DNA of 43,743 bases from Macrostomum lignano (Eukaryota). Of this stretch, positions 1 to 23,500 are shown in pieces. A program made the position numbers and the translations under genes. Below the pieces are notes generated by a model. It saw only the letters and a list, made by a program, of their open reading frames with translations, did not search any database and was not told the origin of the DNA. How positions within the stretch are numbered: position 1 is the first letter of the stretch; each line of letters starts with the position of its first letter. Location of the stretch: positions 1-43,743 of the forward strand of contig NIVC01002568.1 in assembly GCA_002269645.1 (NCBI GenBank). Reading direction: 5' to 3'.

Positions 1-1923
1 TGTGGTCCTACCGGGACATGAACTCCTGGTGCGTCTGGAGCGCCAAACTGCAGCTCAACAAGCGCTCAGAGCTCAGCGGAACAAGAGCATCGCCTCCGTG
101 CTCAGCGGAGGCTGGGGCCGACGGGGACGGCGGCAGCGAGCGGCTGCGGTGGCCAGAGGGGTCCTCCAGCCGGTCCTCCCTGCTGTGCTACCCGGAGAAC
201 CTGACTCTGGCAACCTGTACTACTTCATGATGACGCCGACTCTCTGCTATGAGCTCAACTTTCCCAGGCTGATGCGAATTCGGAAGCGATTCTTGGTCAA
301 GCGATGTCTGGAACTCGTGTTCCTGCCGCAGGTAAGCCGGGCAGCAGGTGTCAGCAATGCAGTGTCAGACCACATAAGTCACTCAGTCGCGCAATGTCAG
401 ATCAAATGAGTCAGTGTCACTCAGTGTCAGTCAAGTCAGGCACAATTCTGCAGTCGCTTTCGTAGTGTCAGATTAAATCAGATGAGTCAGGCACAGCTAT
501 GCGCAGTCAGATCAGATGAGTCAGGCACAGCTATGCAGTCAGATCAGATGAGTCAGGCACAGCTATGCAGTCAGATCAGATGAGTCAGGCACAGCTATGC
601 AGTCAGATCAGATGAGTCAGGCACAGCTATGCAGTCAGATCAGATGAGTCAGGCACAGCTATGCAGTCAGATCAGATGAGTCAGTCACAGCTATGCAGTC
701 AGATCAGATGAGTCAGGCACAGCTATGCAGTCAGATCAGATGAGTCAGGCACAGCTATGCAGTCAGATCAGATGCCAGTCACGCAGTGTCAGCAGTCCAG
801 CTACGCCTCGCATCCGCAGGTGATGGCGGGCCTGACGCAGCAGTGGATCATTCCGATCCTGAACAACTCCGTGAAGCCGCTGCAGGCCTCGGAATGGCCG
901 GTGGTGCTGGAGCGGCTGCTGAAGCTGGCCATCCCCAACCACCTCATCTGGCTGATCTTCTTCTACGTGTTCTTCCACTCCGCGCTGAACGTGGCCGGGG
1001 AGCTGACGCTGTTCGGCGACCGCAACTTCTACAAGGACTGGTGGAACAGCGAGAGCGTCACCGAGTTCTGGACGCTCTGGAATGTGCCCGTTCACCGCTT
1101 TGCCAAGCGGCACATCTTCACTCCGCTGATCCACCGCTGGGGCTTCAACAAGCTGCTGGCCTCTGTTGTGGTCTTCGCCGTGTCCGCCTTCTTCACGAGC
1201 TGCTGGTATCCGTGCCGCTGCGCATGTTCCGGCTCTGGGCTTTCCTGGCCATGATTATGCAGGTGCGGCGGACAGGGCTGATCCCTGTGCTGGTCCCAAT
1301 GTGCTGGTCCCACCGATCCCACCGCTGGTCCCAGTGTACTAGTCTCACTGATCCCTGTGCTGGTCCCAGTGTACTAGTCCCACCGATCCCACTGCTGGTC
1401 CCAGTGTACAAGTCCCACTGATCCCTGTATTGGTCCAAGTGTGCTGGTCCCAGTGCTGCTGGTCCCAGTGTGCTGGTCCCAGTGTGCTGGTCCCAGTGTG
1501 CTGGTCCCAGTGTGCTGGTCCCAGTGTGCTGGTCCCAGTGTGCTGGTCCCAGTGTGCTGGTCCCAGTGTGCTGGTACCAGTGTGCTGGTCCCAGTGTGCT
1601 GGTCCCAGTGTGCTGGTCCTACTGATCTCAGTTCTGATCCCAGTGTGCTGGTCCCAGTGTACTAGTCCCACCGATCCCACTGCTGGTCACTCCTGCAGAT
1701 GGGCAGCTGAGCAGGTCACTCCTGCAGATGGGCAGCTGAGCAGGTCACTCCCCACCCGCAGGTTCCGTTCGCCATGTTCGTCAGTCGGGTTCTCCGAGGC
1801 GGTCAGCTCGGCAACATGGCGGTGTGGCTCAGCCTCATCATCGGACAGCCTCTCGCCATCATCATGTACTTTCACGACTACTACGTGAGCCTGCACCAGG
1901 GCAAGGCTGAGGGTGCTGTGTGA
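1..1923 (+). CDS. DGAT1: Diacylglycerol O-acyltransferase 1 (MBOAT family), 5'-truncated by the window edge; exons <1-331, 820-1262, 1762-1923
   Basis: DGAT1 motifs [62 protein letters not shown] and IIGQPLAIIMYFHDYY. GT-AG introns join the exons in frame. Two 1-nt deletions (about 210 and 1194) break the frame in this sequence. Confidence 0.95.
478..772. repeat. 32-bp minisatellite (GTCAGATCAGATGAGTCAGGCACAGCTATGCA)n in a DGAT1 intron
   Basis: Direct tandem copies at 32-bp spacing. Confidence 0.95.
1280..1750. repeat. 14-bp minisatellite (GTGCTGGTCCCAGT)n, followed by two copies of a 29-bp unit, in the last DGAT1 intron
   Basis: Direct tandem copies; boundaries approximate. Confidence 0.9.
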
Positions 1924-2626: not shown

Positions 2627-3297
2627 CCCATAGTGGGATCAGCACCTCATAGTGGGATCAGCACCTCATAGTGGGATCAGCACCTCATAGTGGATCAGCA
2701 TCCATAGTGGGATCAGCACCCATAGTGGGATCAGCATCCCATAGTGGGATCAGCACCCATAGTGGGATCAGCACCCATAGTGGGATCAGCACCCCATAGT
2801 GGGATCAGCACCCATAGTGGGATCAGCATCCCATAGTGGGATCAGCACCCATAGTGGGATCAGCACCCCATAGTGGGATCAGCATCCCATAGTGGGATCA
2901 GCACCCCATAGTGGGATCAGCACCCCATAGTGGGATCAGCATCCCATAGTGGGATCAGCACCCATAGTGGGATCAGCACCTCATAGTGGGATCAGCACCC
3001 ATAGTGGGATCAGCACCCCATAGTGGGATCAGCATCCCATAGTGGGATCAGCACCCATAGTGGGATCAGCACCCCATAGTGGGATCAGCACCCCATAGTG
3101 GGATCAGCATCCCATAGTGGGATCAGCATCCCATAGTGGGATCAGCACCCATAGTGGGATCAGCACCCATAGTGGGATCAGCATCCCATAGTGGGATCAG
3201 CACCCATAGTGGGATCAGCATCCCATAGTGGGATCAGCACCTCATAGTGGGATCAGCATCCCATAGTGGGATCAGCACCCCATAGTGGGATCAGCAC
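2627..3297. repeat. 18-19-bp minisatellite (CCCATAGTGGGATCAGCA[C/T])n upstream of the MRPL46 ATG
   Basis: More than 30 tandem units, each with an internal inverted repeat CCCA-TAG-TGGG. Confidence 0.95.
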
Positions 3298-3328
3298 CAG
3301 GATCTGCATCCCAGTCCCCCGCCATCCC

Positions 3329-4664
3329 ATGGCTACATCAGCCGCTGTGGCTGCCCTGTGGCGATCGGGCTCAGCCGCCACTCCGGGCCTCACCCGGTCT
3401 GGCCGGCTGCTCAGCGTTGGCCTGCTCATCCAGCGCAAAGCTGTGCTCACGCCTGACCTCACTGAACTGGAGACTCGAGCCTCGGACCTCTTCACCCGGC
3501 TGGACTTTGAGCGCAGCCGCCTGTCCGACTTTGAGCTGCGCGACCGCGCCGAGTCGGAGGCAGCCAAGCGGAGCCTCAGCGCAGCCGCGGAGGGCAAAGT
3601 CCAGGTGGCCAGGGACGGCGCCGTAATTACCGCCAAGGACCTGATGCAGCGGTGGGCTGCTGAGCAACAGGCAGTCACTCTGGCCTCCAGGTGTGCTGTC
3701 GGTTTCACTTAATGCTTTAATTGTATTGCATAGCCACTCTCGCTACTCACAGTAGCTGTTTGCACAGCTAGGTCAGCTGCAGTCCGTCCTCACTACTCAC
3801 AGTATCAAATAGCTGTTTGCACAGCTAGGTCAGCTGCAGTCCGTCCTCACTACTCACAGTATCAAATAGCTGTTTGCACAGCTAGGTCAGCTGCAGTCCG
3901 CTCTCACTACTCACAGTAGCTGTTTGCACAGCTAGGTCAGCTGCAGTCCGCTCTCACTACTCACAGTAGCTGTTTGCTCAGCTAGGTCAGCTGCAGTCCG
4001 CTCTCACTACTCACAGTAGCTGTTTGCACAGCTAGGTCAGTTGCAGTCCGCTCTCACTACTCACAGTAGCTGTTTGCACAGCTAGGTCAGCTGCAGTCCG
4101 CTCTCACTACTCACAGTAGCTGTTTGCACAGCTAGGTCAGCTGCAGTCCGCTCTCACTACTCACAGTAGCTGTTTGCACAGCTAGGTCAGTTGCAGTCCG
4201 CTCTCACTACTCACAGTAGCTGTTTGCACAGCTAGGTCAGCTGCAGTCCGCTCTCACTACTCACAGTAGCTACTCCGCATTCTCTCCACCACAGGGAGGC
4301 CGCCGACCCCAGCCTGAAGCGGCCAGCCGTGCTGCTCAGCACGGATGCTGACCTCTGCCTCCCCTGCTGCCCAGTTGTTGACGGCGACGCCAGCCTTCGA
4401 GCCGCCTGCGACCGCCTACTGGAGCTGATGGGGCTGACCGCCAGCTGCCGGTTGCTAGGCAACGCGCCAGTCGGCCTGCACACGTACAAGTACAAGAAAT
4501 CCCCAGTTTCCCTGTTCCTGCACCGGGCCATCTTCACCGGTGCCGACTGGCGCAGCGCGGAGGCCTCGGGCAGCTGGAAGTGGGTGGACGCGGACTCGCT
4601 GCCCGGCCGCGTCCCGGACAGGCGGCTGCTGAAGAAGCTGCGGCTGCTGGCTGCCGAGTTTTGA
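3329..4664 (+). CDS. MRPL46: Mitochondrial ribosomal protein mL46 (Nudix-like fold), about 243 aa; exons 3329-3690 and 4295-4664
   Basis: Presequence-like N-terminus. LLIQRKAVLTPDLTELE...ERSRLSDFELR and LLGNAPVGLHTYKY match recalled mL46 motifs. A phase-2 GT-AG intron joins the exons in frame (732 nt total). Confidence 0.85.
3745..4270. repeat. 50-bp minisatellite in the MRPL46 intron
   Basis: Unit CAGTAGCTGTTTGCACAGCTAGGTCAGCTGCAGTCCGCTCTCACTACTCA, about 10 copies. Confidence 0.95.
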
Positions 4665-4930: not shown

Positions 4931-6520
4931 ATGCCGCTGCTGCCGCTGCTGTCCTCTGGGCGGCTGGCCCGTCTGACCGCCTCTGGCCGCCGTCTTCTCA
5001 GCTCCACCAGCGGCGGCGCGCAGCCTCCCAAGACCGGCATCCTCATGCTGAACATGGGCGGGCCGGAGACACTGGACGATGTTGGCGACTTTCTGCACCG
5101 CCTGTTCAGTGACGGGGACTTGATCCCGTTGCCCGCACAGTCTCGGCTGTCTAAGTACATCGCCAGGAGGCGCACCCCGGCCATCAGGGAGCAGTACTAC
5201 CGCATTGGCGGCGGCAGCCCAATCCTCAAGTGGACTGAGGCTCAGGTGAGTCCCCGCTCAGGGGACAGTTTTAGCTTTTGTTTAGCTTCAATCTTAGTAT
5301 TCGGTGAGTGGATGCAAATTTTCTAGCGATACTGGCTTGGCATTTCACATATGAGCTTCTGCATGTGTCCAAGTGCGAGACTCGGACTCACGATTGGCCA
5401 GGACCAGTGTCTGAGTTCTCTTTGCCAGCTCAAAGACACACGCGTCAAATTTCTGTTTATCCATCAGTGCGCAACCTTTTGCACACCCTATAAGAGATTC
5501 GCTTCAAATTGTTTCCTTGCTTCTCTTCAGTAGGCGATCTCTCTTATATATCACTGTTCGGGTGCCGATATGTATCGTAAATAACTTTCCAGCATGTCAG
5601 ACTTCGTAGGAGCTGACCAGCCATGAAAGCTGACCATGGGAGAATTATCCCCAAACCCGCAGGGCCGCGCCATGACGGCTCAGCTGGACCGGCTGAGCCC
5701 GGGATCGGCGCCGCATCGCCACTACGTTGGCTTCCGCTACGCCCGGCCGCTGCTGGAGGACGCCGTGGAGGCGATGGAGCGGGACGGCGTGCAGCACGCG
5801 ATCGCCTTCTCACAGTACCCGCAGTACTCCTGCAGCACCAGCGGCAGCTCCTTCAACGCGCTGGCCGCGTACTACCGCAAGCGCAGCGGGGCCAGCAGCA
5901 TTCAGCGCTGGTCGCTCATCGACCGCTGGCCGGCGCACGCTGGCTTCGTGGCCGCCGTGGCCGAGCGGGTTCGGCCAGAGCTGGATAGGCTGGGGCCGGA
6001 GGAACGGGCCCGCTGCGCGCTGCTGTTCTCCGCCCACTCGCTGCCCATGTCGGTGGTGAACCGGGGCGACCCGTACCCGGCTGAGGTGGCCGTCACCGCC
6101 CATATGGTGGCGCAGGCGCTGGGCCCCGGCAGCGTGCCGTACCGGCTGGTCTGGCAGTCCAAGGTGGGTCCGCTGCCCTGGCTGGGCCCCAGCACGGAGG
6201 AGGCCATCCGCGGCCTGGTGAAGCGCGGCCGCGACCAGCTGGTTCTGGTGCCCATCGCCTTCACCAGCGACCACATCGAGACGCTGTACGAGCTGGACGT
6301 CGAATACGCAGGCAAACTGGCCGGCGACCTCGGCGCCCGCGTCCTCCGCTCCGAGGCTCTCAACGACAGTCCGACCTTCGTGTCTGCGCTGGCCGACCTG
6401 GTGCTGCAGCACCTGGCCGAGGGCTGCACCGTCAGCTCGCAGTTCCAGCTGCGCTGCCCGCTGTGCACAAATCCCAGGTGCGCCGCGGCCAGGGAGTTCT
6501 TCGCCCAGCATGGCAACTGA
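4931..6520 (+). CDS. FECH: Mitochondrial ferrochelatase, about 390 aa; exons 4931-5245 and 5663-6520
   Basis: Motifs [66 protein letters not shown] and [16 protein letters not shown]. Animal-type C-terminal [2Fe-2S] ligands CPLCTNPRC are present. Phase-0 GT-AG intron. Confidence 0.97.
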
Positions 6521-7353
6521 CTGGCTGCTGTCTTACCGGTGCTGATCCTCCTTTATTGCGTCTGTTCAGCAATTGTATGTTTTTGTCTTACCGGCTGCAT
6601 TCGGTTGACGATTTTGGTTTACCTGCGACGGCCCACAATGTATAACTGGGGCTGATATTTGCACCGCTTGTTCTTATAGTTAGTTATAGGCAGGTGCATG
6701 CCTTTGGCGCTGACTGCTTCTCCCAGATTCCTTCGCTTTGTTCTGCTTTATTCGGCATTTTCAGCTAGTAAAAATGAATTGTATGGCTGTAACTGTGCAT
6801 TAATTATTAATCATATCGAAATAAACTCGGAGTTGCTGGCGCCTCTGTGAGAGCTCTGCAACTGATCAGCTTTACTACTTGACAGAATATCTAGTGTGGC
6901 TTCCTGGACAATCGTACCTGAGCCAATAATTAATGGAATGCGTTCTCGTTGCTGGGTTAATGTGATTTTTGCTGCGCTATTTGGCAGGTACTTTGTGAAC
7001 TTATTAGAACCCAACAGGCAGACATTATGGCTTATGCGGTCACATGATGCAATTACAGCTACGAATATGCACATGGAAGAGTCAAATGTAGCACCTCTAG
7101 CGAGCGGCGACTTCTCTTAACTCATTCACTCTACACTCGGAGGGGTCTACTATAAAGCTGTCGTAGCGTAAGTTCGATCGTACGTCGGAACTTTTACACT
7201 GCGGAAATAAGAACAATCTTATGTTACGATGGCTTTGTAGAACTGGCCCGGATATTTTAACATGGCACTGAGAGGACTCTTAAACTCCAGATAGTTATCA
7301 TTGCTTCACAATGGACTTCGGTGGGCTGGATTCCGGGACTTCAGAGGGGCCGT

Positions 7354-7722
7354 CTCCCCAGTGCTTCAGTGGACTGGCTCCCCAGTGCTTCAGTGGACTG
7401 GCTCCCCAGTGCTTCAGTGGACTGGCTCCCCAGTGCTTCAGTGGACTGGCTCCCCAGTGCTTCAGTGGACTGGCTCCCCAGTGCTTCAGTGGACTGGCTC
7501 CCCAGTGCTTCAGTGGACTGGCTCCCCAGTGCTTCAGTGGACTGGCTCCCCAGTGCTTCAGTGGACTGGCTCCCCAGTGCTTCAGTGGACTGGCTCCCCA
7601 GTGCTTCAGTGGACTGGCTCCCCAGTGCTTCAGTGGACTGGCTCCCCAGTGCTTCAGTGGACTGGCTCCCCAGTGCTTCAGTGGACTGGCTCCCCAGTGC
7701 TTCAGTGGACTGGCTCCCAAGT
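7354..7722. repeat. 24-bp minisatellite (CCCCAGTGCTTCAGTGGACTGGCT)n
   Basis: About 15 near-perfect intergenic tandem copies. Confidence 0.95.
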
Positions 7723-7844
7723 GCATGTACTAAACTTATTTTTAAAAGGCTCAAAAGATTTTCATGAAACTTGCACCGTTCGATCATAAAGGCACTAGAA
7801 TGTTTCGCAAACAAACTCATTTATTAAATCTGAAGTACTTTTGG

Positions 7845-7889
7845 CAAGGATGACTAAAGTAACGCATATATATACTTAAGTAGTCCTTG
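7845..7889. mobile_element. hAT-type micro-MITE (45 bp)
   Basis: Imperfect TIRs CAAGGATGACTAAAG and CTTAAGTAGTCCTTG. The 8-bp direct repeat ACTTTTGG lies at 7837-7844 and 7890-7897. Confidence 0.75.
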
Positions 7890-8518
7890 ACTTTTGGTTG
7901 GATTAGAAGCCGCAAAGTGAAATATTTATTATTTGATTTTGCTTTAGATTTTAAATATTTATATTTTGCTTTAACTCGATAGATAGAAACTTCTCTTTAG
8001 TTGGTTGGAGCCCTACTATAGCTTGTATTTGTATACACGAGTATTCAGTATTAGTAGTTCTTGAGCAGAAGACAGGCCCCTGCTGAATGTAAGGTTGGTT
8101 GGCTTTACTTCTAAGGCTTTGTCCAGCGAGTCAGGCTGTGGAGAGAGGCGTTCTTTCTGTGTGTACAGTCATTTAGCGCTGGGAAGGCGGGGGACAGGGA
8201 AAAGAATGTACATTGACGCAGGGCAGAGTGTACATTTGTGCACGGGCAAGGGGGTTTCTAGAAAGAGTCGAGGCATTGGGCTTCATTTCTCTCCCCGCGG
8301 GCCAGCAGGGAGAGGCTGACAGGGCTGTGGGTAGGTAGGGCCTGGCTTGTACATTAAACCTATTATAAAAGAAGAAGGCAAGCAACGACAAGAATGAAAA
8401 CGAAAAATGAAAACTGAGGCTTCCGGATTTAGCAGATAATTTGTTTTCTGTTTTACGTTTTAAATTAAAAAGCGAGTCAGAAAGCTGAATAAAACTCTGA
8501 CATCATCGTCTCAAGCAA

Positions 8519-11500
8519 ATGGCCACCGATCTCAGAGACAAACTCAAAAGAAGGCATTCCCCACTGCTCGATGAGTCCGAGCCCAGCGTCAAGTCAGCCG
8601 AGCCCACAGAGAAGCACCTGACGGAGCTGCGGCAGTGGCGCTTCGCCCGCTCCTTGGTGGACGTCTTCCTGAAGGGAGACGGCAGGATGTACCACACAGC
8701 GGATAAGAACCTTTCGGAGGCGCAGAACATGCTGGACCGCTGGCTGCTGTCCTTCCAGCTGGACTACGCTGGCAGCATGGACTCGCGCTACCCGCTGTTT
8801 CCGCAAAGCCTGAGCGAGGAGGACTCGGTGAACCAGAAGCTGATCGACGAGTGCGTGGAGAAGAAGTTCAGCTCGGACAGGGAGAACGCCAGGACCATCT
8901 TTGGTCAGTTGGAGCAGCGACTGCGCAAGTTCCTGAAGGACGATGGCAGGGACGAAGACACGAGCGACCTCCGCATAGAGCTGATTGAGGACAGCGAAGA
9001 TGCAGCTCACGTGACACTGGGCGACTTCAAGTCCAAGCACTGCTGGCGGGTGAAGTTCCTGGTGCGCAACTTCGGACTGCTGCCAGCCACCAGGATGCTG
9101 ATCAGGTACGAGGCGCTGGGCACCGGCAGTCTGCAGTGGGGCGACCCCATCACAGTGCACAATGCACTGCATGACCTCATGGGAGTTCGGTACGAGGGCT
9201 TCGCGTCTCCTCTGAACTCCAAGATGATCGACAAGGCGGACTCCCGCTTCTGCAGCCTCTTCATCGACACTGACGAGGAGTTCGGCAGCATGGGCAGCTT
9301 CTTCAAGGTGGACTTCTCCAAGTGCCACGGCGGATGGACGGTCAACCCGCCATTCATCGAGGAGCTCATGGACCGGGTGGCCACCAAGGTGCTGAACTAC
9401 CTGGACACTGGCGATGAGAACTGCTGGTTCTTCGTCACCTTCCCCAGGTTCGACTGTTGAGAGCGCTCAGCTTTTTGTTCCACCAGCTACCTTTTTAATC
9501 ATACTTAGCAGTCCCGGATCAACTCAGGATTGTCATCAGCCACCGATCCCGGTATTTGAGCCTATTTGGGATCCGCACCAGCCACTGATCCCGGTATTTG
9601 AGCACTCTATTTGGGATCCTCTCCCAGCCACTGATCCCGGTATTTGAGCACTCTATTTGGGATCCTCTCCCAGCCACAGATCCCGGTATTTGAGCACTCT
9701 ATTTGGGATCCGCACCAGCCACTGATCCCGGTATTTAAGCCTATTTGGGATCCTCTCCCAGCCACTGATCCCGGTATTTGAGCACTCTATTTGGGATCCT
9801 CTCCCAGCCACAGATCCCGGTATTTGAGCACTCTATTTGGGATCCTCTCCCAGCCACTGATCCCGGTATTTGAGCACTCTATTTGGGATTGGGATCCTCT
9901 CCCAGCCACTGATCCCGGTATTTGAGCCTATTTGGGATCCTCACCCAGCCACTGATCCCGGTATATGAGCACTCTATTTGGGATTCTGTACAAGCTATGG
10001 ATCCAGAGATACGGGATTTGAGCATTCAAGTCGCGATCCCCTCCCAGCTATTGATCCCGGGATCTGAGCACTTTTTGGGACCATCTGCCGCTCAATACTC
10101 CCAGGATTTGAGAGCCACAATTTTACTGGGATGTCTCTTGGCCTGAAAGGAGCTCTCCTACAACATTAAGCGCAAATTCTGAGGGTATTTACGAGCTAGA
10201 AGTGGAGTGACTCTGTGAAACTGATGCAGTTAAATTACCAGTGTATCTCAGATACTTGATTAAAAATTGCTGTCTGCATTGCACTAGGAATTACCAATTT
10301 ACTCGTATTTACACCTGTACTCGTAGTTTGAGCGACCTGTCTACACAGTACAGCTAAGCAAGTGCGCTTCTAGCTCAGAAATCTCTGAGGTGGCGACCTT
10401 TGCTTAGTTAACATTCATGGCAGATTTCAAAGCATGCCAAAATTCTGTCTATACCCGATCCTCGCTACTCTTAGTAGAGGAATGTGCTGGTCTGCTTCAG
10501 TTTTTCTCCAAGTCGAAGCCTTCTTGCGGCCGAATGAATTTTATTTAGATAGGAATTCGATGATCAAATCGGATTTGATTGCTTCCAACCCACTAAGGGG
10601 ATTTCTTATCTACGTCAGAAACTTTTTTATTTTTCTTACACCTCTAAATTGTATTTTTTCCATCGCCTAAACATCCGCCAGGTGGGATGACACCCCCGGC
10701 TGGGTGCGTCTCAGTGATTCCAAGCGCCGCATCGACCAGATCGAGCTGGACGACGGCGGCTTCACGGTGCAGGACTGCTACGGCCGCATCTTCGTGCCCC
10801 GCAACAACCTCACCATCTTCGTGATGGGGAACCGCCTGCCCGATGATGCCAACCTAAAGGAGATTCGCAAGATGTTCCGCAACCTCAACCGGCACATGGT
10901 GGAGGAGGAGTGGCGGATGACCTGCAGCAAGCAGCTCCGTGTAATCCTCAAGCCCAGCCGGCACAGAGCTGCCAAGACCGACGGCCATGAGACGGGCAAC
11001 ACCGCGGATCTCCGGAACAGACTCAAAAGAAGGCATTCCCCACTGCTTGATGAGTCCGAGCCCAGCGTCAAGTCAGCCGAGCCCACAGAGAAGCACCTGA
11101 CGGAGCTGCGGCAGTGGCGCTTCGCCCGCTCCTTGGTGGACGTCTTCCTGAAGGGAGACGGCAGGATGTACCACACAGCGGATAAGAACCTTTCGGAGGC
11201 GCAGAACATGCTGGACCGCTGGCTGCTGTCCTTCCAGCTGGACTACGCTGGCAGCATGGACTCGCGCTACCCGCTGTTTCCGCAAAGCCTGAGCGAGGAG
11301 GACTCGGTGAACCAGAAGCTGATCGACGAGTGCGTGGAGAAGAAGTTCAGCTCGGACAGGGAGAACGCCAGGACCATCTTTGGTCAGTTGGAGCAGCGAC
11401 TGCGCAAGTTCCTGAAGGACGATGGCAGGGACGAAGACACAAGCGACCTCCGCATAGAGCTGATTGAGGACAGCGAAGATGCAGCTCACGTGACACTGGG

Positions 11501-14500
11501 CGACTTCAAGTCCAAGCACTGCTGGCGCGTGAAGTTCCTGGTGCGCAACTTCGGACTGCTGCCAGCCACCAGGATGCTGATCAGGTACGAGGCGCTGGGC
11601 ACCGGCAGTCTGCAGTGGGGCGACCCCATCACGGTGCACAATGCACTGCATGACCTCATGGGAGTTCGGTACGAGGGCTTCGCGTCTCCTCTGAACTCCA
11701 AGATGATCGACAAGGCGGACTCTCGCTTCTGCAGCCTCTTCATCGACACTGACGAGGAGTTCGGCAGCATGGGCAGCTTCTTCAAGGTGGACTTCTCCAA
11801 GTGCCACGGTGGATGGACGGTCAACCCGCCCTTCATCGAGGAGCTCATGGACCGGGTGGCCACCAAGGTGCTGAACTACCTGGACACTGGCGATGAGAAC
11901 TGCTGGTTCTTCGTCACCTTCCCCAGGTTCGACTGTTGAGAGCGCTCAGCTTTTTGTTCCACCAGCTACCTTTTTAATCATACTTAGCAGTCCCGGATCA
12001 ACTCAGGATTGTCATCAGCCACCGATCCCGGTATTTGAGCCTATTTGGGATCCGCACCAGCCACTGATCCCGGTATTTGAGCACTCTATTTGGGATCCTC
12101 TCCCAGCCACTGATCCCGGTATTTGAGCACTCTATTTGGGATCCTCTCCCAGCCACAGATCCCGGTATTTGAGCACTCTATTTGGGATCCTCTCCCAGCC
12201 ACTGATCCCGGTATTTGAGCCTATTAGGGATCCTCACCCAGCCACTGATCCCGGTATTTGAGCCCATTTGGGATCCTCTCCCAGCCACTGATCCCGGTAT
12301 TTGAGCCTATTAGGGATCCTCACCCAGCCACTGATCCCGGTATTTGAGCCCATTTGGGATCCTTACCAGCCACTGATCCCGGTATTTGAGCCTATTTGGG
12401 ATCCTTACCAGCCACTGATCCCGGTATTTGAGCCTATTTGGGATCCTCTCCCAGCCACTGATCCCGGGATTCAAGCACTATTAGGGATCCTCACCCAGCC
12501 ACTGATCCCGGTATTTGAGCCTATTTGGGATCCTCTCCCAGCCACTGATCCCGGTATTTGAGCCCATTTGGGATCCTTACCAGCCACTGATCCCGGTATT
12601 TGAGCCTATTTGTGATCCTCTCCCAGCCACTGATCCCGGTATTTGAGCACTCTATTTGGGATTCTCTCCAAGCTATGGATCCAGAGATACGGGATTTGAG
12701 CATTCAAGTCGCGATCCTCTCCCAGCTATTGATCCCGGGATCTGAGCACTTTTTGGGACCATCTGCCGCTCAATACTCCCAGGATTTGAGAGCCACAATT
12801 TTACTGGGATGTCTCTTGGCCTGAAAGGAGCTCTCCTTCTACAACATTAAGCGCAAATTCTGAGGGTATCTACGAGCCAGAAGTGGAGTGACTCTGTGAA
12901 ACTGATGCAGTTAAATTACCAGTGTATCTCAGATACTTGATTAAAAATTGCTGTCTGCATTGTGCTACAAATTATCAATTTATATACGATCGTAGTTTAA
13001 GCGATCTGTCCACACAGTAGCAAAGCAGTGCGCTCATTCATGGCAGATTTCAAAGCATGCCAAAATTCCGTCTATATCCGATCCTAGCTACTCTTAGTGG
13101 AGGAATGTGCTGGTCTGCTTCAGTTTTCTCCAAATCGAAAGGGACAACCGCTACCAATTAAATTTTATTGGGATTCGGTGATCAAAACAGTGTTGATTGC
13201 TTCGAACTCACCGAGGTGATTTCTCCGCTTAGCCAGATACTTCCACTGTTTGAGTACTTTTGTTTTTTATTTCGTACTTTTAGTTCTCCTTAGTTACATC
13301 TCTAATTTGTATTATTTTCCGTTGCCGAAAATCCGCCAGGTGGGATGACACCCCCGGCTGGGTGCGTCTCAGTGATTCCAAGCGCCGCATCGACCAGATC
13401 GAGCTGGACGACGGCGGCTTCACGGTGCAGGACTGCTACGGCCGCATCTTCGTGCCCCGCAACAACCTCACCATCTTCGTGATGGGGAACCGCCTGCCCG
13501 ATGATGCCAACCTAAAGGAGATTCGCAAGATGTTCCGCAACCTCAACCGGCACATGGTGGAGGAGGAGTGGCGGATGACCTGCAGCAAGCAGCTCCGTGT
13601 AATCCTCAAGCCCAGCCGGCACAGAGCTGCCAAGACCGACGGCCATGAGACGGGCAACACCGCGGATCTCCGGAACAGACTCAAAAGAAGGCATTCCCCA
13701 CTGCTTGATGAGTCCGAGCCCAGCGTCAAGTCAGCCGAGCCCACAGAGAAGCACCTGACGGAGCTGCGGCAGTGGCGCTTCGCCCGCTCCTTGGTGGACG
13801 TCTTCCTGAAGGGAGACGGCAGGATGTACCACACAGCGGATAAGAACCTTTCGGAGGCGCAGAACATGCTGGACCGCTGGCTGCTGTCCTTCCAGCTGGA
13901 CTACGCTGGCAGCATGGACTCGCGCTACCCGCTGTTTCCGCAAAGCCTGAGAGAGGAGGACTCGGTGAACCAGAAGCTGATCGACGAGTGCGTGGAGAAG
14001 AAGTTCAGCTCGGACAGGGAGAACGCCAGGACCATCTTTGGTCAGTTGGAGCAGCGACTGCGCAAGTTCCTGAAGGACGATGGCAGGGACGAAGACACAA
14101 GCGACCTCCGCATAGAGCTGATTGAGGACAGCGAAGATGCAGCTCACGTGACACTGGGCGACTTCAAGTCCAAGCACTGCTGGCGGGTGAAGTTCCTGGT
14201 GCGCAACTTCGGACTGCTGCCAGCCACCAGGATGCTGATCAGGTACGAGGCGCTGGGCACCGGCAGTCTGCAGTGGGGCGACCCCATCACAGTGCACAAT
14301 GCACTGCATGACCTCATGGGAGTTCGGTACGAGGGCTTCGCGTCTCCTCTGAACTCCAAGATGATCGACAAGGCGGACTCTCGCTTCTGCAGCCTCTTCA
14401 TCGACACTGACGAGGAGTTCGGCAGCATGGGCAGCTTCTTCAAGGTGGACTTCTCCAAGTGCCACGGCGGCTGGCATGTGAACCCACCCTTCATCGAGGC

Positions 14501-15017
14501 CATGATGGACCGGGTGGCCTCAAGGATTTTGGACTATCTGGACACTGGCGATGAGAACTGCTGGTTCTTCGTCACCTTCCCCAGGTGGGACGATGCCCCC
14601 AGCTGGGAGCGCCTCAGCCTCTCTAAGCACCTCATTGACAAGTTTGCGCTTGACAATGGCGGCTTCACGGTGCAGGACGGCTACGGCCGCGTCTTCGAGC
14701 CGCGCAACAACCTCACCATCTTCGTGCTGGGCCACCGCCTTCCCGAGGGCGCCAACCTGCAGGAGATTCGCAAGATGTTCCGCAACCTGGACAAGAGCAG
14801 GGTGGAGCAGGAGTGGCAGATGACCTGCGGCAAGCAGGTCCGCCGAATGCTCACGGCCACCCGGCGCAGTGCAGTCAGGGTTTCTGGGGACTCCCCAGCT
14901 CGCTGCCTCCCAGACGATGACGTGCCGTCCGCCGCCCCGGCCGTGCTGCCCGCCAAGCCCGTCATCGACCCGCAGCTGAAGCCGAATCGCCAGTTGAAGC
15001 GGTTCAAGAAGTCCTAG
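8519..15017 (+). CDS. PCIF1/CAPAM-like cap-adenosine N6-methyltransferase with three tandem helical+MTase units, about 1283 aa; exons 8519-9447, 10682-11926, 13340-15017
   Basis: Each unit has LDRWLL...YPLFP, RYEALGTGSLQW, EGFASPLNS, CSLFIDTDEEFGSMG and the catalytic NPPF motif, which align to PCIF1 FECFASPLN...ANPPFCEELM. Splicing AG|GT at 9447/10682 and 11926/13340 restores FPRWDD, the sequence found uninterrupted in unit 3. Total 3852 nt, divisible by 3. Confidence 0.85.
9538..9990. repeat. 42-46-bp minisatellite (CCAGCCACTGATCCCGGTATTTGAGC..CTATTTGGGATCCT) in PCIF1-like intron 1
   Basis: Tandem units with an internal GATCCC...GGGATC inverted repeat. Confidence 0.9.
12017..12660. repeat. 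Paralogous, longer 42-46-bp minisatellite in PCIF1-like intron 2
   Basis: Same unit as 9538-9990 but more copies. Confidence 0.9.
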
Positions 15018-17272: not shown

Positions 17273-17577
17273 CTTACTACTTACTGCCTTACATGTACTA
17301 ACTGCCTTACTAACTGCCTTACTTACTGCCTTACTAACTGTCTTACTTACTGCCTTACTAACTGTCTTACTTACTGCCTTACTTACTGCCTTACTAACTG
17401 TCTTACTAACTGTCTTACTTACTGCCTTACTAACTGTCTTACTTACTGCCTTACTTACTGTCTTACTTACTGCCTTACTAACTGTCTTACTTACTGCCTT
17501 ACTAACTGTCTTACTTACTGCCTTACTAACTGTCTTACTTACTGCCTTACTAACTGTCTTACTTACTGCCTTACTAC
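17273..17577. repeat. 12-bp-period array ACTTACTGCCTT / ACTAACTGTCTT
   Basis: Tandem units visible directly. Confidence 0.9.
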
Positions 17578-17934: not shown

Positions 17935-19450
17935 TCCTTCTCTCTCTCTCTCTCTCTCTCTCCATCTCTCATTATATCTCTCGATCTCCAACTCTCATTA
18001 TATCTCTCGATCTCCAACTCTCATTATATCTCTCGATCTCCAACCCTCATTATATCTCTCGATCTCCATCTCTCATTATATCTCTCCATCTCCATCTCTC
18101 ATTATATCTCTCGATCTCCAACTCTCATTATATCTCTCGATCTCCATCTCTCATTATATCTCTCGATCTCCATCTCTCATTATATCTCTCCATCTCCATC
18201 TCTCATTATATCTCTTCATCTCCATCTCTCATTATATCTCTCGATCTCCATCTCTAGTTGTATCTCTCGATCTCAATCTCTCATTATATCTCTCCATCTC
18301 TATCTCTCATTGTATCTCTCAATCTCCATCTCTCATTATATCTCTCCATCTCCATCTCTCATTATATCTCTCCACCTCCATCTCTCATTATATCTCTTCA
18401 TCTCCATCTCTCATTATATCTCTTCATCTCCATCTCTCATTATATCTCTCGATCTCCATCTCTAGTTGTATCTCTGGATCTCCATCTCTCATTATATCTC
18501 TCCATCTCTATCTCTCATTGTATCTCTCAATCTCCATCTCTCATTATATCTCTCCATCTCTATCTCTCATTGTATCTCTCAATCTCCATCTCTCATTATA
18601 TCTCTCCATCTCTATCTCTCATTGTATCTCTCAATCTCCATCTCTCATTATATCTCTCGATCTCCATCTCTCATTGTATCTCTCGATCTCCATCTCTAAT
18701 AATATCTCTCCATCTCCATCTCTCATTATATCTCTCGATCTCCATCTCTAGTTGTATCTCTCGATCTCCATCTCTCATTATATCTCTCCATCTCTATCTC
18801 TCATTGTATCTCTCAATCTCCATCTCTCATTATATCTCTCGATCTCCATCTCTCATTATATCTCTCCATCTCCATCTCTCATTATATCTCTCCACCTCCA
18901 TCTCTCATTATATCTCTCGATCTCCATCTCTCATTATATCTCTCGATCTCCATCTCTCATTATATCTCTCCATCTCTATCTCTCATTGTATCTCCCGATC
19001 TCCATCTCTCTTTATATCTCTCCATCTCCATCTCTCATTATATCTCTCCACCTCCATCTCTCATTATATCTCTTCATCTCCATCTCTCATTATATCTCTC
19101 CATCTCTATCTCTCATTGTATCTATCAATCTCCATCTCTCATTATCTCTCCATCTCTATCTCTCATTGTATCTCCCGATCTCCATCTCTCTTTATATCTC
19201 TCCATCTCCATCTCTCATTATATCTCTCCACCTTTATCTCTCATTATATCTCTTCATCTCCATCTCTCATTATATCTCTCTATCTCTATCTCTCATTATA
19301 TCTCTCGATCTCCATCTCTCATTATATCTCTCTATCTCTATCTCTCATTATATCTCTCGATCTCCAGCTCTCATCATATCTCTCTCCATCCAAGGACGAC
19401 TAAAGTAACTTAAGTAGTCCTTGTCTCCATCTCTCATTATATCTCTCTGT
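17935..19450. repeat. (CT)n followed by a degenerate pyrimidine-rich minisatellite (TCTCCATCTCTCATTATATCTC-like)
   Basis: About 1.5 kb with an almost G-free + strand. Confidence 0.95.
19391..19423. mobile_element. hAT-type micro-MITE (33 bp) inserted in the CT-rich array
   Basis: CAAGGACGACTAAAG-TAA-CTTAAGTAGTCCTTG flanked by TCTCCATC on both sides (19383-19390 and 19424-19431). Confidence 0.7.
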
Positions 19451-20594: not shown

Positions 20595-23500
20595 ATGGAC
20601 AAGAAGGAGTACTGCAAGGTCACCGTGCACTGGGAGAACAAGTCTACTGGGAAAATGGACACCAGGATCCTGGTAATTAGTCCGCGACAGTCTGAAATAA
20701 ACTGCCACTGCGCGCAGACTCTTGCGCCAATCAAGCAAAGCTGCACAAAATGTCTTGTTAGCTCTGTAGCTCTAGTGGTGAAGGTGAATGGGGCCAAACT
20801 GACCACTGACTCAACCGACTGATGTACGGATAAGTGTGCGGGAGTGACCAGGGCACGCATAAGTGTGCGGGAGTGACCAGGGCGCGCATATAAGTGTGGG
20901 GGAGTGACCAGGGCACGCATAAGTGTGCGGGAGTGACCAGGGCGCGCATATAAGTGTGGGGGAGTGACCAGGGCACGCATAAGTGTGCGGGAGTGACCAG
21001 GGCACGCATAAGTGTGCGGGAGTGACCAGGGCACGCATAAGTGTGCGGGAGTGACCAGGGCACGCATAAGTGTGCGGGAGTGACCAGGGCACGCATAAGT
21101 GTGCGGGAGTGACCAGGGCACGCATAAGTGTGCGGGAGTGACCAGGGCACGCATAAGTGTGGGGGAGTGACCAGGGCACGCATAAGTGTGGGGGAGTGAC
21201 CAGGGCACGCATAGGTGTGCAGGAGTGACCAGGGCACGCATAAGTGTGGGGGAGTGACCAGGGCACGCATAAGTGTGGGGGAGTGACCAGGGCACGCATA
21301 AGTGTGGGGGAGTGACCAGGGCACGCATAAGTGTGCGGGAGTGACCAGGGCACGCATAAGTGTGGGGGAGTGACCAGGGCACGCATAAGTGTGGGGGAGT
21401 GACCAGGGCACGCATATAAGTGTGGGGGAGTGACCAGGGCGCGCATAAGAGACGGCCTATTGGAGTCAGTAGGCTCACAATCCGACACTGAAGCCAAGCA
21501 TCACGGATGCACCTCTGTGACGAAGAAATCGAAACTGCCTCTTATCCCCAGATCATGCGGTCCGATCGCATGGAGGTGGCGGTGCTGAAAGGCCAGATCC
21601 GTACCGAGCGCTCTGTGCACTTCCTGGACATTCGCCGACTGGAAGCGGGCGGGGAGAACCGCGCCAGTCTGCAGATAAGCACCGGCGAGGTCCTGCAGTT
21701 CATCTGCACTCTCGAGGCCGACCTCATCAAGCTGGTTTCGCATCTGGTGGCCAGCCTGCAGTTTCACCTGCCGCAGCTGCGCACCACACAGCAGCAGCTC
21801 TTGGATCTGCGGCTGCCAAAGTCGTGGGACCTGGAGTCCTTGGTAGAGGCCCACAAGGTGGAGCTGGGCCGGCCGGGCTCGGACAAGTGCGGCCACTTCG
21901 GCAGCGCCTACGAGTTCTTCTGTCGCTACACGGGCGCCGAGGTTCGCGAAGAGATCCGCTGGGACGTGGAGACCATCTACTTCTCGCAGGGCTCGCGCAC
22001 CTTCAACATGACTGACTTCAGCCACTTCGGCCCGGCGGACTTCGCCATCATCCTGGCCTCCCTCAGCTTCAATGACTACTTCACTGCGCTCCATGTCGAG
22101 GGCATCAAGTTTGTGAGCTCCTGGCTGTGTACAAGATCCGAATTTGTGACTCTGAGTTACCTGGCCCTTGGATCTCCGAACCAATCAGATGTCCTTGGGC
22201 TCGCTGGGTCAGCGTGGGCCTTGGATAGGCTTCCGAACCAATCAGATGTCCTTAGGCTCGCTGGGTCAGCGTGGGCCTTGGTTAGGCTTCCGAACCAATC
22301 AGATGTCATTAGGCTCGCTGGGTCAGCGTGGGCCTTGGTTAGGCTTCCGAACCAATCAGATGTCATTAGGCTCGCTGGGTCAGCGTGGGCCTTGGTTAGG
22401 CTTCCGAACCAATCAGATGTCATTGGGCTCGCTGAGTCAGACTTGTGGTTTGCTGCAGACGTACTAAAAGTAGTATTGATATACTTCAAATAGAAAACAC
22501 TACGAGTCTCGTATCCGTACAAGTTAATTCGGGAGCTTTAAGCTTCAGGTGGCTTCAGAGTTTAGGTGGGGGCTAAATTTCATCCATCGGTACATCGAAC
22601 TCAAAACTTCTCACGAATCATTTGTCCCTTCCAGACAGCTCAGATGAGCAAGTTCCTGGAGATGATGCTGACTTACAACACAACGCTGCTGGAATTGCAC
22701 CTGCCCAACTGCGGCCTAAAAATGTGAGTAGCTATCACTGCTTCTCACCCTGCTCTCTGCATTTAATCCCAGCTTTCACATCTCCCAACTCCGCCACAGA
22801 GACTCGGTGCGGGCGATTGCCTCAGCGTTGGACGCCAACAGCGGGTTCCGCATCAAGGTGCTCGACCTGTCCGGCAACACCTTCAGCGACGATAAAAGTA
22901 AATTGAAAAGGGCTGCTGTCCTGCTACCTCTGGAGTCCCCTTCTCAGGCTTAGCGCTGTTTGCCATGCACTCACTCCGGGTGTCACGTCACTCACTTTGG
23001 GCGTCACTCACTCCCTCCGGGGTGCCACTCACGCACTCACTGTGAGGCGTCACTTACTCACTCTGGGCGTCACTTACTCACTCTGGGCGTCACTCACTCA
23101 CTCTGGGCGTCACTCATTCACTCTGGGCGTCACTCACTCACTCTGGACGTCACTTACTCACCCTGGTCGTCACTCACTCACTCCACTCTGGGCGTCACTT
23201 ACTCACTCTGGACGTCACTTACTCACCCTGGGCGTCACTCACTCACTCTGGGCGTCACTCACTCACTCCAGGTGCCACTCATTCACTCTGGGCGTCACTT
23301 ACTCACCCTGGGCGTCACTCACTCACTCTGGGCGTCACTCACTCACTCTGGGCGTCACTCACTCACTCTGGGCGTCACTCACTCACTCTGGGCGTCACTC
23401 ACTCACTCTGGGCGTCACTCACTCACTCTGGGCGTCACTCACTCACTCTGGGCGTCACTCACTCACCCTGGTCGTCACTCACTCACTCCACTCTGGGCGT

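What the first reader, a model, noticed from the sequence alone, without database searches (positions are those of the whole stretch)
8519..15017. One gene encoding three tandem PCIF1/CAPAM-like cap m6A methyltransferase units
Seen: the three track ORFs splice (8519-9447, 10682-11926, 13340-15017) into about 1283 aa made of three units of about 415 aa. Each unit has a PCIF1-like helical region, the FASPLN motif and an intact NPPF catalytic motif. Established: PCIF1/CAPAM normally has a single catalytic domain and makes m6Am at the cap-adjacent adenosine. Inference: three active sites on one chain could support successive methylation (for example N6,N6-dimethyl, as in the trypanosome cap4), multi-cap binding or specialised substrates such as spliced-leader or snRNA caps. 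I do not know of a described multi-catalytic-domain PCIF1.
Basis: partly seen in the sequence, partly recalled or inferred. Interest (0 to 1): 0.88.

Follow-up and report, generated by a model that had tools for sequence, protein, structure and literature searches.

The report
Flatworm gene with three PCIF1-like methyltransferases
A gene of the flatworm Macrostomum lignano really does string three complete, apparently intact copies of a PCIF1/CAPAM-type RNA cap methyltransferase module on one protein chain, an arrangement not described in the papers searched, but the copies are almost identical, so it looks like a recent internal triplication rather than a new enzyme chemistry.

Summary
The window is Macrostomum lignano DNA (assembly GCA_002269645.1). 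Splicing 8519-9447 / 10682-11926 / 13340-15017 with two GT..AG phase-2 introns gives 1283 aa. This is 100% identical to the deposited, RNA-seq-guided model PAA56815.1 (BOX15_Mlig000263g6).

Each of the three units (415, 415 and 453 aa) matches Pfam PCIF1_WW (E 1e-25 to 1e-29). Each has FASPLN and NPPF. An AlphaFold model of one unit has CAPAM crystal structures as its best PDB matches.

Two other contigs carry the same three-unit gene with different intron lengths, so it is not an assembly artefact.

There is no WW domain. Units 1 and 2 differ in only 5 residues. The closest relatives are single-unit paralogues in the same worm and short WW-less PCIF1-like proteins, several sampled from giant-virus-like contigs.

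The best reading is a recent in-frame intragenic triplication, kept similar by gene conversion. It gives three independent heads on flexible linkers: more valency or dose, not new chemistry.

The protein is in databases but uncharacterised. No paper was found on it or on any PCIF1 with several intact catalytic copies. The number of units in the mature mRNA still needs long-read cDNA.

The parts
8519..9447 (+). Exon 1. It holds the start codon and unit 1: a disordered basic/acidic N-terminus, the helical region, and the methyltransferase core up to ...FFVTFPR (split codon AG|G).
   Evidence: ORF and splice donor CCCCAG|GTTCGA. Pfam PF12237 positions 26-144 of 176, cut off at the exon end. There is an in-frame stop shortly upstream of the ATG.
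9344..9355 (+). NPPF catalytic motif of unit 1 (aa 276-279).
   Evidence: AACCCGCCATTC = NPPF.
9448..10681 (+). Intron 1 (1234 nt, GT..AG, phase 2). It contains a 46-nt minisatellite at 9537-9984.
   Evidence: The homologous intron is 1228 nt in L001 and 1941 nt in L002.
10682..11926 (+). Exon 2 (1245 nt = 415 codons). It holds the C-terminal third of unit 1's methyltransferase domain (10682-10997). This runs in frame, with no stop and no ATG, into the linker and into unit 2's N-terminus, helical region and core (10998-11926).
   Evidence: Unit 2 starts NTADLRNRLKRRHS, against MATDLRDKLKRRHS in unit 1.
11823..11834 (+). NPPF catalytic motif of unit 2 (aa 691-694).
   Evidence: AACCCGCCCTTC = NPPF.
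11927..13339 (+). Intron 2 (1413 nt, GT..AG, phase 2). It contains a 43-nt minisatellite at 12016-12673. It is 84-89% alignable to intron 1.
13340..15017 (+). Exon 3. It holds the C-terminal third of unit 2 (13340-13655), then the whole of unit 3 (13656-15014) with no intron at the FPR|W position. Unit 3 has a more diverged C-terminal part and a roughly 45-aa disordered tail. The stop codon is 15015-15017.
   Evidence: Pfam PF12237 positions 26-168 are uninterrupted.
14481..14492 (+). NPPF catalytic motif of unit 3 (aa 1106-1109).
   Evidence: AACCCACCCTTC = NPPF.

Best explanation
This is a single Macrostomum lignano gene, Mlig000263.g6. Its product, 1283 aa, is three tandem, complete, WW-less PCIF1/CAPAM-family modules. 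Each module is a small helical domain plus a Rossmann methyltransferase domain with NPPF. The modules are joined by roughly 35-45-residue disordered linkers.

The gene arose by in-frame tandem duplication inside an originally single-unit gene. Gene conversion has kept the copies nearly identical. The triplication is older than the split of the three homeologous or allelic loci in the assembly.

Inferred, not shown:
- Each module is an independently active SAM-dependent RNA adenosine-N6 methyltransferase that acts on the cap-adjacent adenosine, like CAPAM.
- The triplication gives three equivalent heads per chain, meaning higher local valency or dose. It does not give a new reaction or divided substrate specificity.
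For: Gene structure:
- GT..AG introns restore the family-conserved FPRW and the C-terminal third of the domain.
- Units 2 and 3 have no ATG at their start, and there is no stop between units.
- If the spliced leader, which ends in ATG, were joined at the exon 2 or 3 acceptors, the reading would be ATG GTG GGA TGA, an immediate stop (sequence, leader).
- The spliced product is identical to the deposited model PAA56815.1. That annotation came from RNA-seq-guided transcript assembly, cut at experimentally mapped trans-splice and poly(A) sites (PMC5730564).

Not an assembly artefact:
- Contigs NIVC01001140 and NIVC01001141 carry the same three-unit gene downstream of ferrochelatase. Their intron lengths differ: 1228/1673 and 1941/1593 nt, against 1234/1413 here.
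- Units cluster by position across loci: 2-15 differences per 930 nt within a position, against 15-39 between positions.
- One locus has the same A-to-D change in all three of its units. This is the signature of gene conversion.

Family and fold:
- PF12237 matches in all units.
- phmmer hits to human and zebrafish CAPAM chains at E 3.6e-17 and 4.7e-16.
- AlphaFold model of unit 3 with mean pLDDT 85.6 and pTM 0.82. Residues 1-28 and 409-453 have low confidence.
- The best PDB matches by Foldseek are CAPAM 6IRW/6IRV/6IRY, at E 2.7e-14 to 1e-12, over about 410-420 columns.

Intactness:
- All residues that are invariant or nearly invariant in the 63-sequence alignment are present.
- NPPF is present in 9 of 9 units across the three loci.
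- dN/dS between units is 0.14-0.52, on small counts.

Cap context of the clade: relatives are fused to FtsJ 2'-O-methyltransferase or viral poly(A) polymerase, or sit next to a cap guanine-N7 methyltransferase.
Against: - No enzymatic or cap-chemistry data exist for this protein or for any WW-less relative that I could find.
- The two donor flanks are identical, and so are the two acceptor flanks. Short RNA-seq reads therefore cannot tell a three-unit mRNA from an exon-2-skipped, in-frame two-unit mRNA.
- No independent transcript contig was found in the protein collection.
- The TM-score to CAPAM is only about 0.43 and the helical domain is much smaller. Cap recognition may therefore differ.
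- One locus (L002) has a frameshift near the end of unit 3. This may be a sequencing error or the start of decay.
Confidence: 0.6

Rival explanations
1. The three heads do something new: stepwise N6,N6-dimethylation, simultaneous binding of several caps, or units specialised for different capped RNAs such as spliced-leader or snRNA caps.
For: - All three active sites look intact.
- M. lignano trans-splices about 30% of its genes with a leader from a small nuclear SL RNA. For SL RNAs in general the paper describes a trimethylguanosine cap (PMC8629364).
- Unit 3 differs from units 1 and 2 at 36 of 130 residues in aa 271-400, around and after NPPF. For example, TVNPPFIEEL becomes HVNPPFIEAM.
Against: - Units 1 and 2 are identical except for 5 residues at the extreme N-terminus, so they cannot be specialised.
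- The published leader starts with C.
- Nothing in the sequence distinguishes a dimethylating from a monomethylating site.
- The disordered linkers suggest independent modules.
Confidence: 0.1
2. The mature mRNA or protein does not carry three units. Possible causes are exon 2 skipping (in frame, giving two units), intron retention ending at FPRFDC*, or a misjudged copy number.
For: - Exon 2 is exactly 415 codons and both introns are phase 2, so skipping stays in frame.
- The donor flanks and the acceptor flanks are identical, so short reads are ambiguous.
- No independent transcript contig was recovered.
Against: - Three separately assembled long-read contigs all have exactly three units, with different intron lengths.
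- All nine units keep open frames and NPPF.
- Position-specific differences are shared across loci.
- The deposited RNA-guided model has three units at all three loci.
Confidence: 0.12
3. It is a polyprotein. The chain is cut in the linkers into three single-unit enzymes, so the triplication is only a dosage device.
For: - The linkers are predicted to be disordered.
- Each contains a basic cluster, RNRLKRRH.
- Single-unit proteins of 320-450 aa are the usual form of this clade.
Against: - There is no sign of a signal peptide. The N-terminus MATDLRDKLKRRHSPLLDESE is hydrophilic, so secretory-pathway convertases are unlikely to act.
- No protease domain is present.
- The basic cluster could equally be a nuclear localisation signal (my inference).
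Confidence: 0.08
4. The modules are active methyltransferases but are not cap-specific. The target could be internal RNA adenosines, uncapped 5' ends or another nucleic acid.
For: - The helical domain, which helps bind the cap in CAPAM, is much reduced. Overall TM to CAPAM is about 0.43.
- There is no WW domain.
- Human PCIF1 itself shows weaker activity on uncapped 5' A and on internal A (PMC8931429).
Against: - The N-terminal helical region is conserved across the WW-less clade: many hits align from about query residue 35-65 onwards.
- Relatives are fused or adjacent to cap-forming enzymes.
Confidence: 0.1

Closest known systems
Vertebrate PCIF1/CAPAM (human 6IRV/6IRW, zebrafish 6IRX-6IS0), the cap-adjacent Am N6-methyltransferase
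   Same: - Same Pfam family (PF12237).
- NPPF catalytic loop.
- FASPLN and DTD..FGS motifs aligned residue by residue.
- Helical region plus Rossmann domain, with CAPAM as the best structural match.
   Different: - No WW domain.
- Each unit is about 415 aa, against roughly 500 aa for the crystallised HD+MTD. The helical domain is smaller.
- Only about 40% identity in the 130-aa core, whereas arthropod PCIF1 sequences are 59-69% identical to human over a 158-aa core.
- Three catalytic modules per chain instead of one.
Single-unit WW-less PCIF1-like proteins. Viral examples: Bodo saltans virus A0A2H4UTM5, Cafeteria roenbergensis virus E3T4I2, Hokovirus A0A1V0SFI2, Pithovirus-like, Salmon gill poxvirus A0A0H4XWM9, Tetraselmis virus 1. 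M. lignano paralogues: Mlig021227, Mlig015920, Mlig030305.
   Same: - Same unit architecture and size (315-480 aa).
- Higher sequence scores than vertebrate PCIF1 gives: 222-358 bits for the best, against 65.6 bits for human.
   Different: All carry a single unit. The nearest paralogue, Mlig021227 (440 aa, 46% identity), has four introns at other positions.
Two-copy PCIF1-like proteins of about 500-870 aa from metagenomes (P0002, P0003, P0029, P0030, P0044, P0099 and others). They are uncharacterised as far as I could find. The one contig I examined, for P0003, looks like a giant virus.
   Same: More than one PCIF1-like methyltransferase core on one chain.
   Different: - Two copies, not three.
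- In the four full-length members whose alignments I read, the N-terminal copy has lost NPPF (for example PPIS, VPPY, APSY), so it looks like a pseudo-enzyme paired with an active copy. Which copy keeps the motif varies in others, such as the fragment P0028.
- The copies are old and diverged.
- The P0003 gene is intronless and lies next to a cap guanine-N7 methyltransferase.
Enzymes with tandem repeated catalytic domains on one chain, such as the dinoflagellate luciferase with three catalytic repeats (from my own knowledge, not tested here)
   Same: Three homologous catalytic modules, each presumed active, produced by internal gene duplication.
   Different: Unrelated fold and chemistry. This is an analogy only.

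Membership tests
PCIF1/CAPAM family (Pfam PF12237) | Significant match to the family profile above the curated threshold | tested here: met
   90.9, 90.1 and 103.7 bits against a cut-off of 31.1, one match per ORF. Three full-length core copies in the spliced protein.
PCIF1/CAPAM family (Pfam PF12237) | Catalytic NPPF motif in the catalytic loop. Its mutation inactivates CAPAM (PMC8287941). | tested here: met
   NPPF at aa 276, 691 and 1106, aligned to NPPF of 6IRV. Present in all nine units of the three loci.
PCIF1/CAPAM family (Pfam PF12237) | Helical domain plus Rossmann methyltransferase domain, as in the CAPAM crystal structures | tested here: met
   AF2 model with pLDDT 85.6. The top six Foldseek PDB hits are all CAPAM, E 2.7e-14 to 1.3e-12, over 407-420 aligned columns. 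TM is only 0.38-0.43 and the helical part is smaller.
Canonical metazoan PCIF1 (orthologue of human PCIF1) | [quoted passage not shown] | tested here: not met
   No WW (PF00397) or any other domain at E <= 0.1 in the three ORFs that together cover the protein. Unit 1 starts at the ATG, with an in-frame stop just upstream.
Canonical metazoan PCIF1 (orthologue of human PCIF1) | Orthologue-level similarity to other animal PCIF1 proteins | tested here: inconclusive
   About 40% identity to human in the 130-aa core, against 59-69% over a 158-aa core for spider, Daphnia and Anopheles. Yet within my set the human core is most similar to these units. A search for a separate WW-containing PCIF1 in M. 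lignano returned only fragments and none from this species.
Cap-specific adenosine-N6 methyltransferase (functional class) | SAM-dependent N6-methylation of the m7G-cap-adjacent (2'-O-methyl)adenosine | not testable with these tools
   Inferred only from homology and from the cap-enzyme fusions and neighbours of relatives.
Single transcription unit / one polypeptide | One mRNA containing all three units | tested here: inconclusive
   Supported by frame continuity, the absence of internal starts, and the RNA-seq-guided deposited model. However, identical junction flanks make short reads ambiguous, and I had no long cDNA data.

The most novel reading that the evidence does not exclude
Macrostomum carries an expanded family of WW-less PCIF1-like genes, with at least five paralogue groups. 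The family scores higher against short WW-less metagenomic proteins, several from giant-virus-like contigs, than against vertebrate PCIF1. It may have been acquired from, or exchanged with, Nucleocytoviricota. Its three-headed member would be a truly multivalent cap-modifying enzyme: the heads would cooperate on clustered or nascent capped RNAs, or on the trimethylguanosine-capped trans-spliced mRNA population. This would give flatworms a cap-adjacent methylation system organised differently from that of vertebrates.
Probability: 0.1. Interest if true: 0.75.

Novelty: new variant of a known kind. Interest (0 to 1): 0.5.

Why it matters
PCIF1/CAPAM is treated as a single-domain enzyme recruited to RNA polymerase II by its WW domain. 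One preprint did not detect m6Am in fly or nematode mRNA (bioRxiv 10.1101/484931).

A flatworm protein with three intact catalytic modules and no WW domain is a natural experiment. It bears on whether valency and recruitment mode matter for cap-adjacent methylation. It also shows that the family is more varied in invertebrates and giant viruses than the vertebrate-centred literature suggests.

M. lignano has published transgenesis methods and genomic resources, so the questions can be tested directly. The near-identity of the units limits the likely biological novelty: the simplest outcome is more of the same activity.

The locus is also a clean example of in-frame intragenic tandem duplication with concerted evolution in a minisatellite-rich, recently polyploid genome.

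Tried and rejected
1. Dinoflagellate-style tandem gene array or polyprotein was my first guess, from the GC content and repeats. I rejected it once the protein matched M. lignano at 100%.

2. Three separate genes or an operon resolved by spliced-leader trans-splicing. I rejected this because units 2 and 3 lack start codons, units 1 and 2 need the next exon to complete their domain, and leader-ATG joined at the cis acceptors reads straight into a stop.

3. Assembly artefact. I rejected this on the evidence of three independent contigs with different intron lengths and position-specific substitutions.

4. The intron as a recent mobile-element insertion ('introner'). The intron sits exactly at an AG|GT site that is uninterrupted in unit 3. 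But I found no other copy in about 70 kb of M. lignano DNA and no terminal inverted repeats. The nearest paralogue has an intron 13 codons away, not at the same place. Gain versus loss stays open.

5. Transcript evidence from public assemblies. The protein collection holds only the three GenBank models and no RNA-derived fragments.

6. A canonical WW-containing PCIF1 in M. lignano. A search seeded with the human core returned mostly short fragments and nothing from this species. This is inconclusive.

7. Literature. No paper holds both 'Macrostomum lignano' and 'PCIF1', or holds Mlig000263.

8. Rfam and spliced-leader scans of the window found nothing.

9. I did not model the full-length protein, because 1283 aa exceeds the 1200-aa limit.
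Full report
**What is there**

The region holds three long + strand ORFs, at 8519-9460, 10704-11939 and 13362-15017. They are 97-98% identical at DNA level over their first 300 nt and repeat with periods of 2479 and 2658 nt.

- The first two ORFs end in ...FFVTFPRFDC*.
- Each is followed by a donor CCCCAG|GTTCGA. About 1.2-1.4 kb downstream lies an acceptor CCGCCAG|GTGGGATGAC.
- Joining 8519-9447, 10682-11926 and 13340-15017 gives 3852 nt, or 1283 codons plus stop. Both introns are GT..AG and phase 2.

The splice is not arbitrary. It replaces FPRFDC* by FPRWDDTPGWVRLSDSKRR..., the direct homologue of the uninterrupted FPRWDDAPSWERLSLSKH... in the third unit. It also restores a Trp that is at least 90% conserved in a 63-sequence family alignment.

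**Source and existing annotation**

The spliced protein is 100% identical over its full length to GenBank PAA56815.1 / UniRef A0A267E5H1. That entry is 'hypothetical protein BOX15_Mlig000263g6' of the flatworm Macrostomum lignano, assembly GCA_002269645.1.

The annotation was built from RNA-seq-guided transcript assemblies (StringTie/TACO). These were cut at experimentally mapped spliced-leader and poly(A) sites, and ORFs were called by TransDecoder (PMC5730564). The three-unit model therefore already rests on transcript data.

One caveat applies. The two donor flanks are identical, and so are the two acceptor flanks. Short reads cannot distinguish exon1-exon2-exon3 from an in-frame exon1-exon3 isoform.

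**Not an artefact**

The 90% cluster of this protein has two more members, on different contigs: PAA71771.1 (1283 aa) and PAA71759.1 (1204 aa).

- Both lie downstream of a ferrochelatase gene, as here.
- Both have exactly three units.
- Their introns are 1228/1673 nt and 1941/1593 nt, against 1234/1413 nt here.

In a nine-unit DNA alignment the units group by position. Between loci there are 2-15 differences per 930 nt for the same position, against 15-39 between positions. The triplication is therefore older than the divergence of these homeologous or allelic loci.

Locus L002 carries the same A-to-D substitution in all three of its units and the same 21-nt deletion in units 2 and 3. This is the mark of gene conversion within the array.

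**Family and fold**

- Each ORF matches Pfam PF12237 (PCIF1_WW) at E 1e-25 to 1e-29. Nothing else matches, and there is no WW domain.
- A 210-aa core query finds three full-length copies in the protein.
- FASPLN is at aa 228/643/1058 and NPPF at aa 276/691/1106.
- By sequence, one unit hits human and zebrafish CAPAM chains at E 3.6e-17 and 4.7e-16. The FASPLN, DTD..FGS and NPPF blocks are aligned.
- An AlphaFold model of unit 3 has mean pLDDT 85.6 and pTM 0.82. It shows an N-terminal helical region, a Rossmann-type alpha/beta domain and a long C-terminal helix. Residues 1-28 and 409-453 have low confidence.
- Its six best PDB matches are all CAPAM structures, at E 2.7e-14 to 1.3e-12 over 407-420 columns. 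TM is only 0.38-0.43, which fits a smaller helical domain.

According to the review PMC8287941, CAPAM is organised as WW-linker-helical domain-methyltransferase domain. The WW domain is dispensable for catalysis but mediates RNA polymerase II CTD binding. The helical domain helps hold the cap.

**How similar the units are**

- Units 1 and 2 differ at 5 residues, all within the first 8 (MATDLRDK against NTADLRNR).
- Units 2 and 3 differ at 1 residue in aa 1-270 and at 36 of 130 residues in aa 271-400.
- At DNA level the C-terminal parts of units 1 and 2 are identical in all three loci. They are 21% diverged from that of unit 3.
- dN/dS between units is 0.14-0.52, on small counts.

Units 2 and 3 have no start codon, and there is no stop between units. 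The C-terminal third of the domain of units 1 and 2 is encoded in the next exon, contiguous with the next unit. The M. lignano spliced leader ends in ATG (PMC8629364). If it were joined at the exon 2 or 3 acceptors it would read ATG GTG GGA TGA, a stop. Independent expression of the units is therefore not a workable reading.

**Relatives**

An exhaustive HMMER search of 1.84 billion representatives with one unit found 2337 relatives at E <= 0.001. Among the best 150, only this protein has three matched stretches.

The closest relatives are other M. lignano proteins, all with a single core:
- Mlig021227 (440 aa, 46% identity)
- A0A1I8HAP9 (359 aa)
- Mlig015920 (372 aa)
- Mlig030305 (361 aa)
- a 1170-aa protein

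Next come short WW-less proteins of 300-450 aa. The contigs I examined look like giant viruses:
- L007 has Rpb5, RNase III and Skp1 in a dense intronless array.
- L005 has PolB and GIY-YIG.
- L003 has a cap guanine-N7 methyltransferase next door.

The BFVD fold search names Bodo saltans virus, Pithovirus-like viruses, Cafeteria roenbergensis virus, Hokovirus, Salmon gill poxvirus and Tetraselmis virus 1. Several relatives are fused to FtsJ 2'-O-methyltransferase, viral poly(A) polymerase, a DEAD helicase, XRN_N or Rpb10. This supports an mRNA-5'-end role for the clade.

In the 130-aa core the units are about 40% identical to human PCIF1. Spider, Daphnia and Anopheles PCIF1 fragments are 59-69% identical to human over a 158-aa core. 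This is a divergent WW-less member, not a well-conserved orthologue. Whether M. lignano also has a canonical PCIF1 could not be settled.

**Other multi-copy PCIF1 proteins**

About fifteen proteins of roughly 500-870 aa among the hits carry two PCIF1-like cores. In the four full-length members whose alignments I read (P0002, P0030, P0040, P0099):
- The N-terminal copy keeps the FxSPxNS and DTD..FGS blocks but has lost NPPF.
- The C-terminal copy keeps NPPY or a close variant such as HPPY or PPF.

Which copy keeps the motif differs in others, such as the fragment P0028. P0003, the one member whose contig I examined, lies in giant-virus-like context. Multi-copy architectures therefore exist in the family, but as an old pseudo-enzyme plus enzyme pair. 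Three intact, nearly identical copies were seen only in M. lignano.

**Most likely mechanism**

Shown:
- One gene model with three complete modules.
- All catalytic and family-conserved residues are present.
- The linkers are predicted to be disordered.
- The origin is an in-frame internal duplication with concerted evolution.

Inferred:
- Each module is an independent SAM-dependent adenosine-N6 methyltransferase for the cap-adjacent nucleotide.
- The chain is a three-headed enzyme whose benefit, if any, is valency or dose.
- Without a WW domain, recruitment is not through the phosphorylated CTD.

Stepwise N6,N6-dimethylation is not indicated by anything in the units. Substrate specialisation is excluded for units 1 and 2 by their identity. 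The spliced-leader cap is made unlikely by a leader that begins with C.

**Origin of the introns**

Unit 3 has no intron at the FPR|W site. The nearest paralogue has four introns, and the closest of them lies 13 codons upstream of this site. The intron sequence has no other copy in the M. lignano DNA at hand and no terminal inverted repeats. Each intron is largely a 43-46-nt minisatellite. It is one of more than twenty minisatellite arrays in this window. Gain versus loss of the intron remains open.

**Verdict**

- The sequence is already public but uncharacterised. No paper was found on it.
- I rate it a new variant of a known kind, of moderate interest.

Noticed in passing
Proteins P0002, P0003, P0029, P0030, P0044, P0099, P0082, P0088, P0101, P0109, P0006; loci L003/L004: A clade of proteins of about 650-870 aa with two tandem PCIF1-like cores. 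In the members I inspected, the N-terminal copy has lost NPPF and the C-terminal copy keeps NPPY/NPPF, like a pseudo-enzyme plus enzyme pair. P0003 lies next to an mRNA cap guanine-N7 methyltransferase on a dense intronless metagenomic contig that looks like a giant virus.
   Followed up: partly
Proteins P0019, P0073, P0049, P0050 (FtsJ); P0042 (viral poly(A) polymerase + GT8); P0005 (DEAD helicase; L005); P0007 (XRN_N); P0017 (RNA_pol_N); P0026/P0037/P0053/P0068 (GT8): WW-less PCIF1-like domains are fused to many other mRNA-end or transcription enzymes. The two contigs I examined for such relatives (L005 for the DEAD-helicase fusion P0005, L007 for the single-domain P0018) look like giant viruses. 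The recurrent fusion to glycosyltransferase family 8 is unexplained.
   Followed up: partly
M. lignano proteins P0164 (Mlig021227), P0013 (Mlig015920), P0016 (Mlig030305), P0015, P0010/P0157: M. lignano has at least five groups of WW-less PCIF1-like paralogues besides the three-unit gene. One older gene model (P0157) joins a Sleeping-Beauty-type transposase HTH to the PCIF1 domain. This may be a model artefact or a link to a transposon.
   Followed up: partly
L002 (NIVC01001141), gene 6001-13149: This copy of the gene differs from the other two loci in four ways: a 1-nt deletion near the end of unit 3 that truncates the protein to 1204 aa; a 21-nt in-frame deletion shared by units 2 and 3; an A-to-D change in all three units; and a changed KRRHS cluster in unit 1. 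Either gene conversion is at work and one homeologue is starting to decay, or these are long-read indel errors.
   Followed up: partly
window 26456-27739 (ORF 26315-28621): A perfect (AGTC)321 microsatellite creates a 768-aa ORF. Its Pfam hits (Gp5_C, DUF445, GerPC) are low-complexity artefacts and not a gene.
   Followed up: no
window 477-774, 2627-3298, 3737-4271, 7354-7724, 17296-17576, 17951-19384, 20826-21449, 22968-23613, 24028-25125, 30649-31450, 33962-34278, 35750-36105, 37624-37976: The window is packed with minisatellite arrays of 19-58-nt units, many 95-100% homogeneous. The 26-nt C/T-rich array at 17951-19384 explains the extreme GC skew there. Such a genome would be expected to be prone to tandem duplication, which fits the intragenic triplication.
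   Followed up: no
window 5636-6520 (+); L001 2378-3976; L002 2178-3773: The last exon of a ferrochelatase gene lies 2 kb upstream on the same strand, and this synteny is conserved in all three loci. A 24-nt x 15.5 array (7354-7724) lies between the two genes. I did not test whether the two genes share a transcription unit.
   Followed up: no
window 40102-41688 (-): An exon-sized ORF with a RhoGEF domain and a weak FYVE hit (an FGD-like gene) lies on the minus strand. An LRR/CARMIL-like gene follows the PCIF1-like gene in L002.
   Followed up: no
window 9447/9448 and 13340-region versus 14577-14590 (unit 3 FPR|W site); L009 6607/7719: The intron of units 1 and 2 sits exactly in a CAG|GT site that is uninterrupted in unit 3. 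The paralogue Mlig021227 has its nearest intron 13 codons upstream. Intron gain in the unit 1/2 ancestor and intron loss in unit 3 are both possible.
   Followed up: partly
L008 (Logan SRR21676451 contig, 2939 nt): The closest relative outside M. lignano is P0011 (446 aa, 41% identity). It is the only gene called on this AT-rich contig, possibly a transcript, from an unidentified sample. Its organism is unknown.
   Followed up: no
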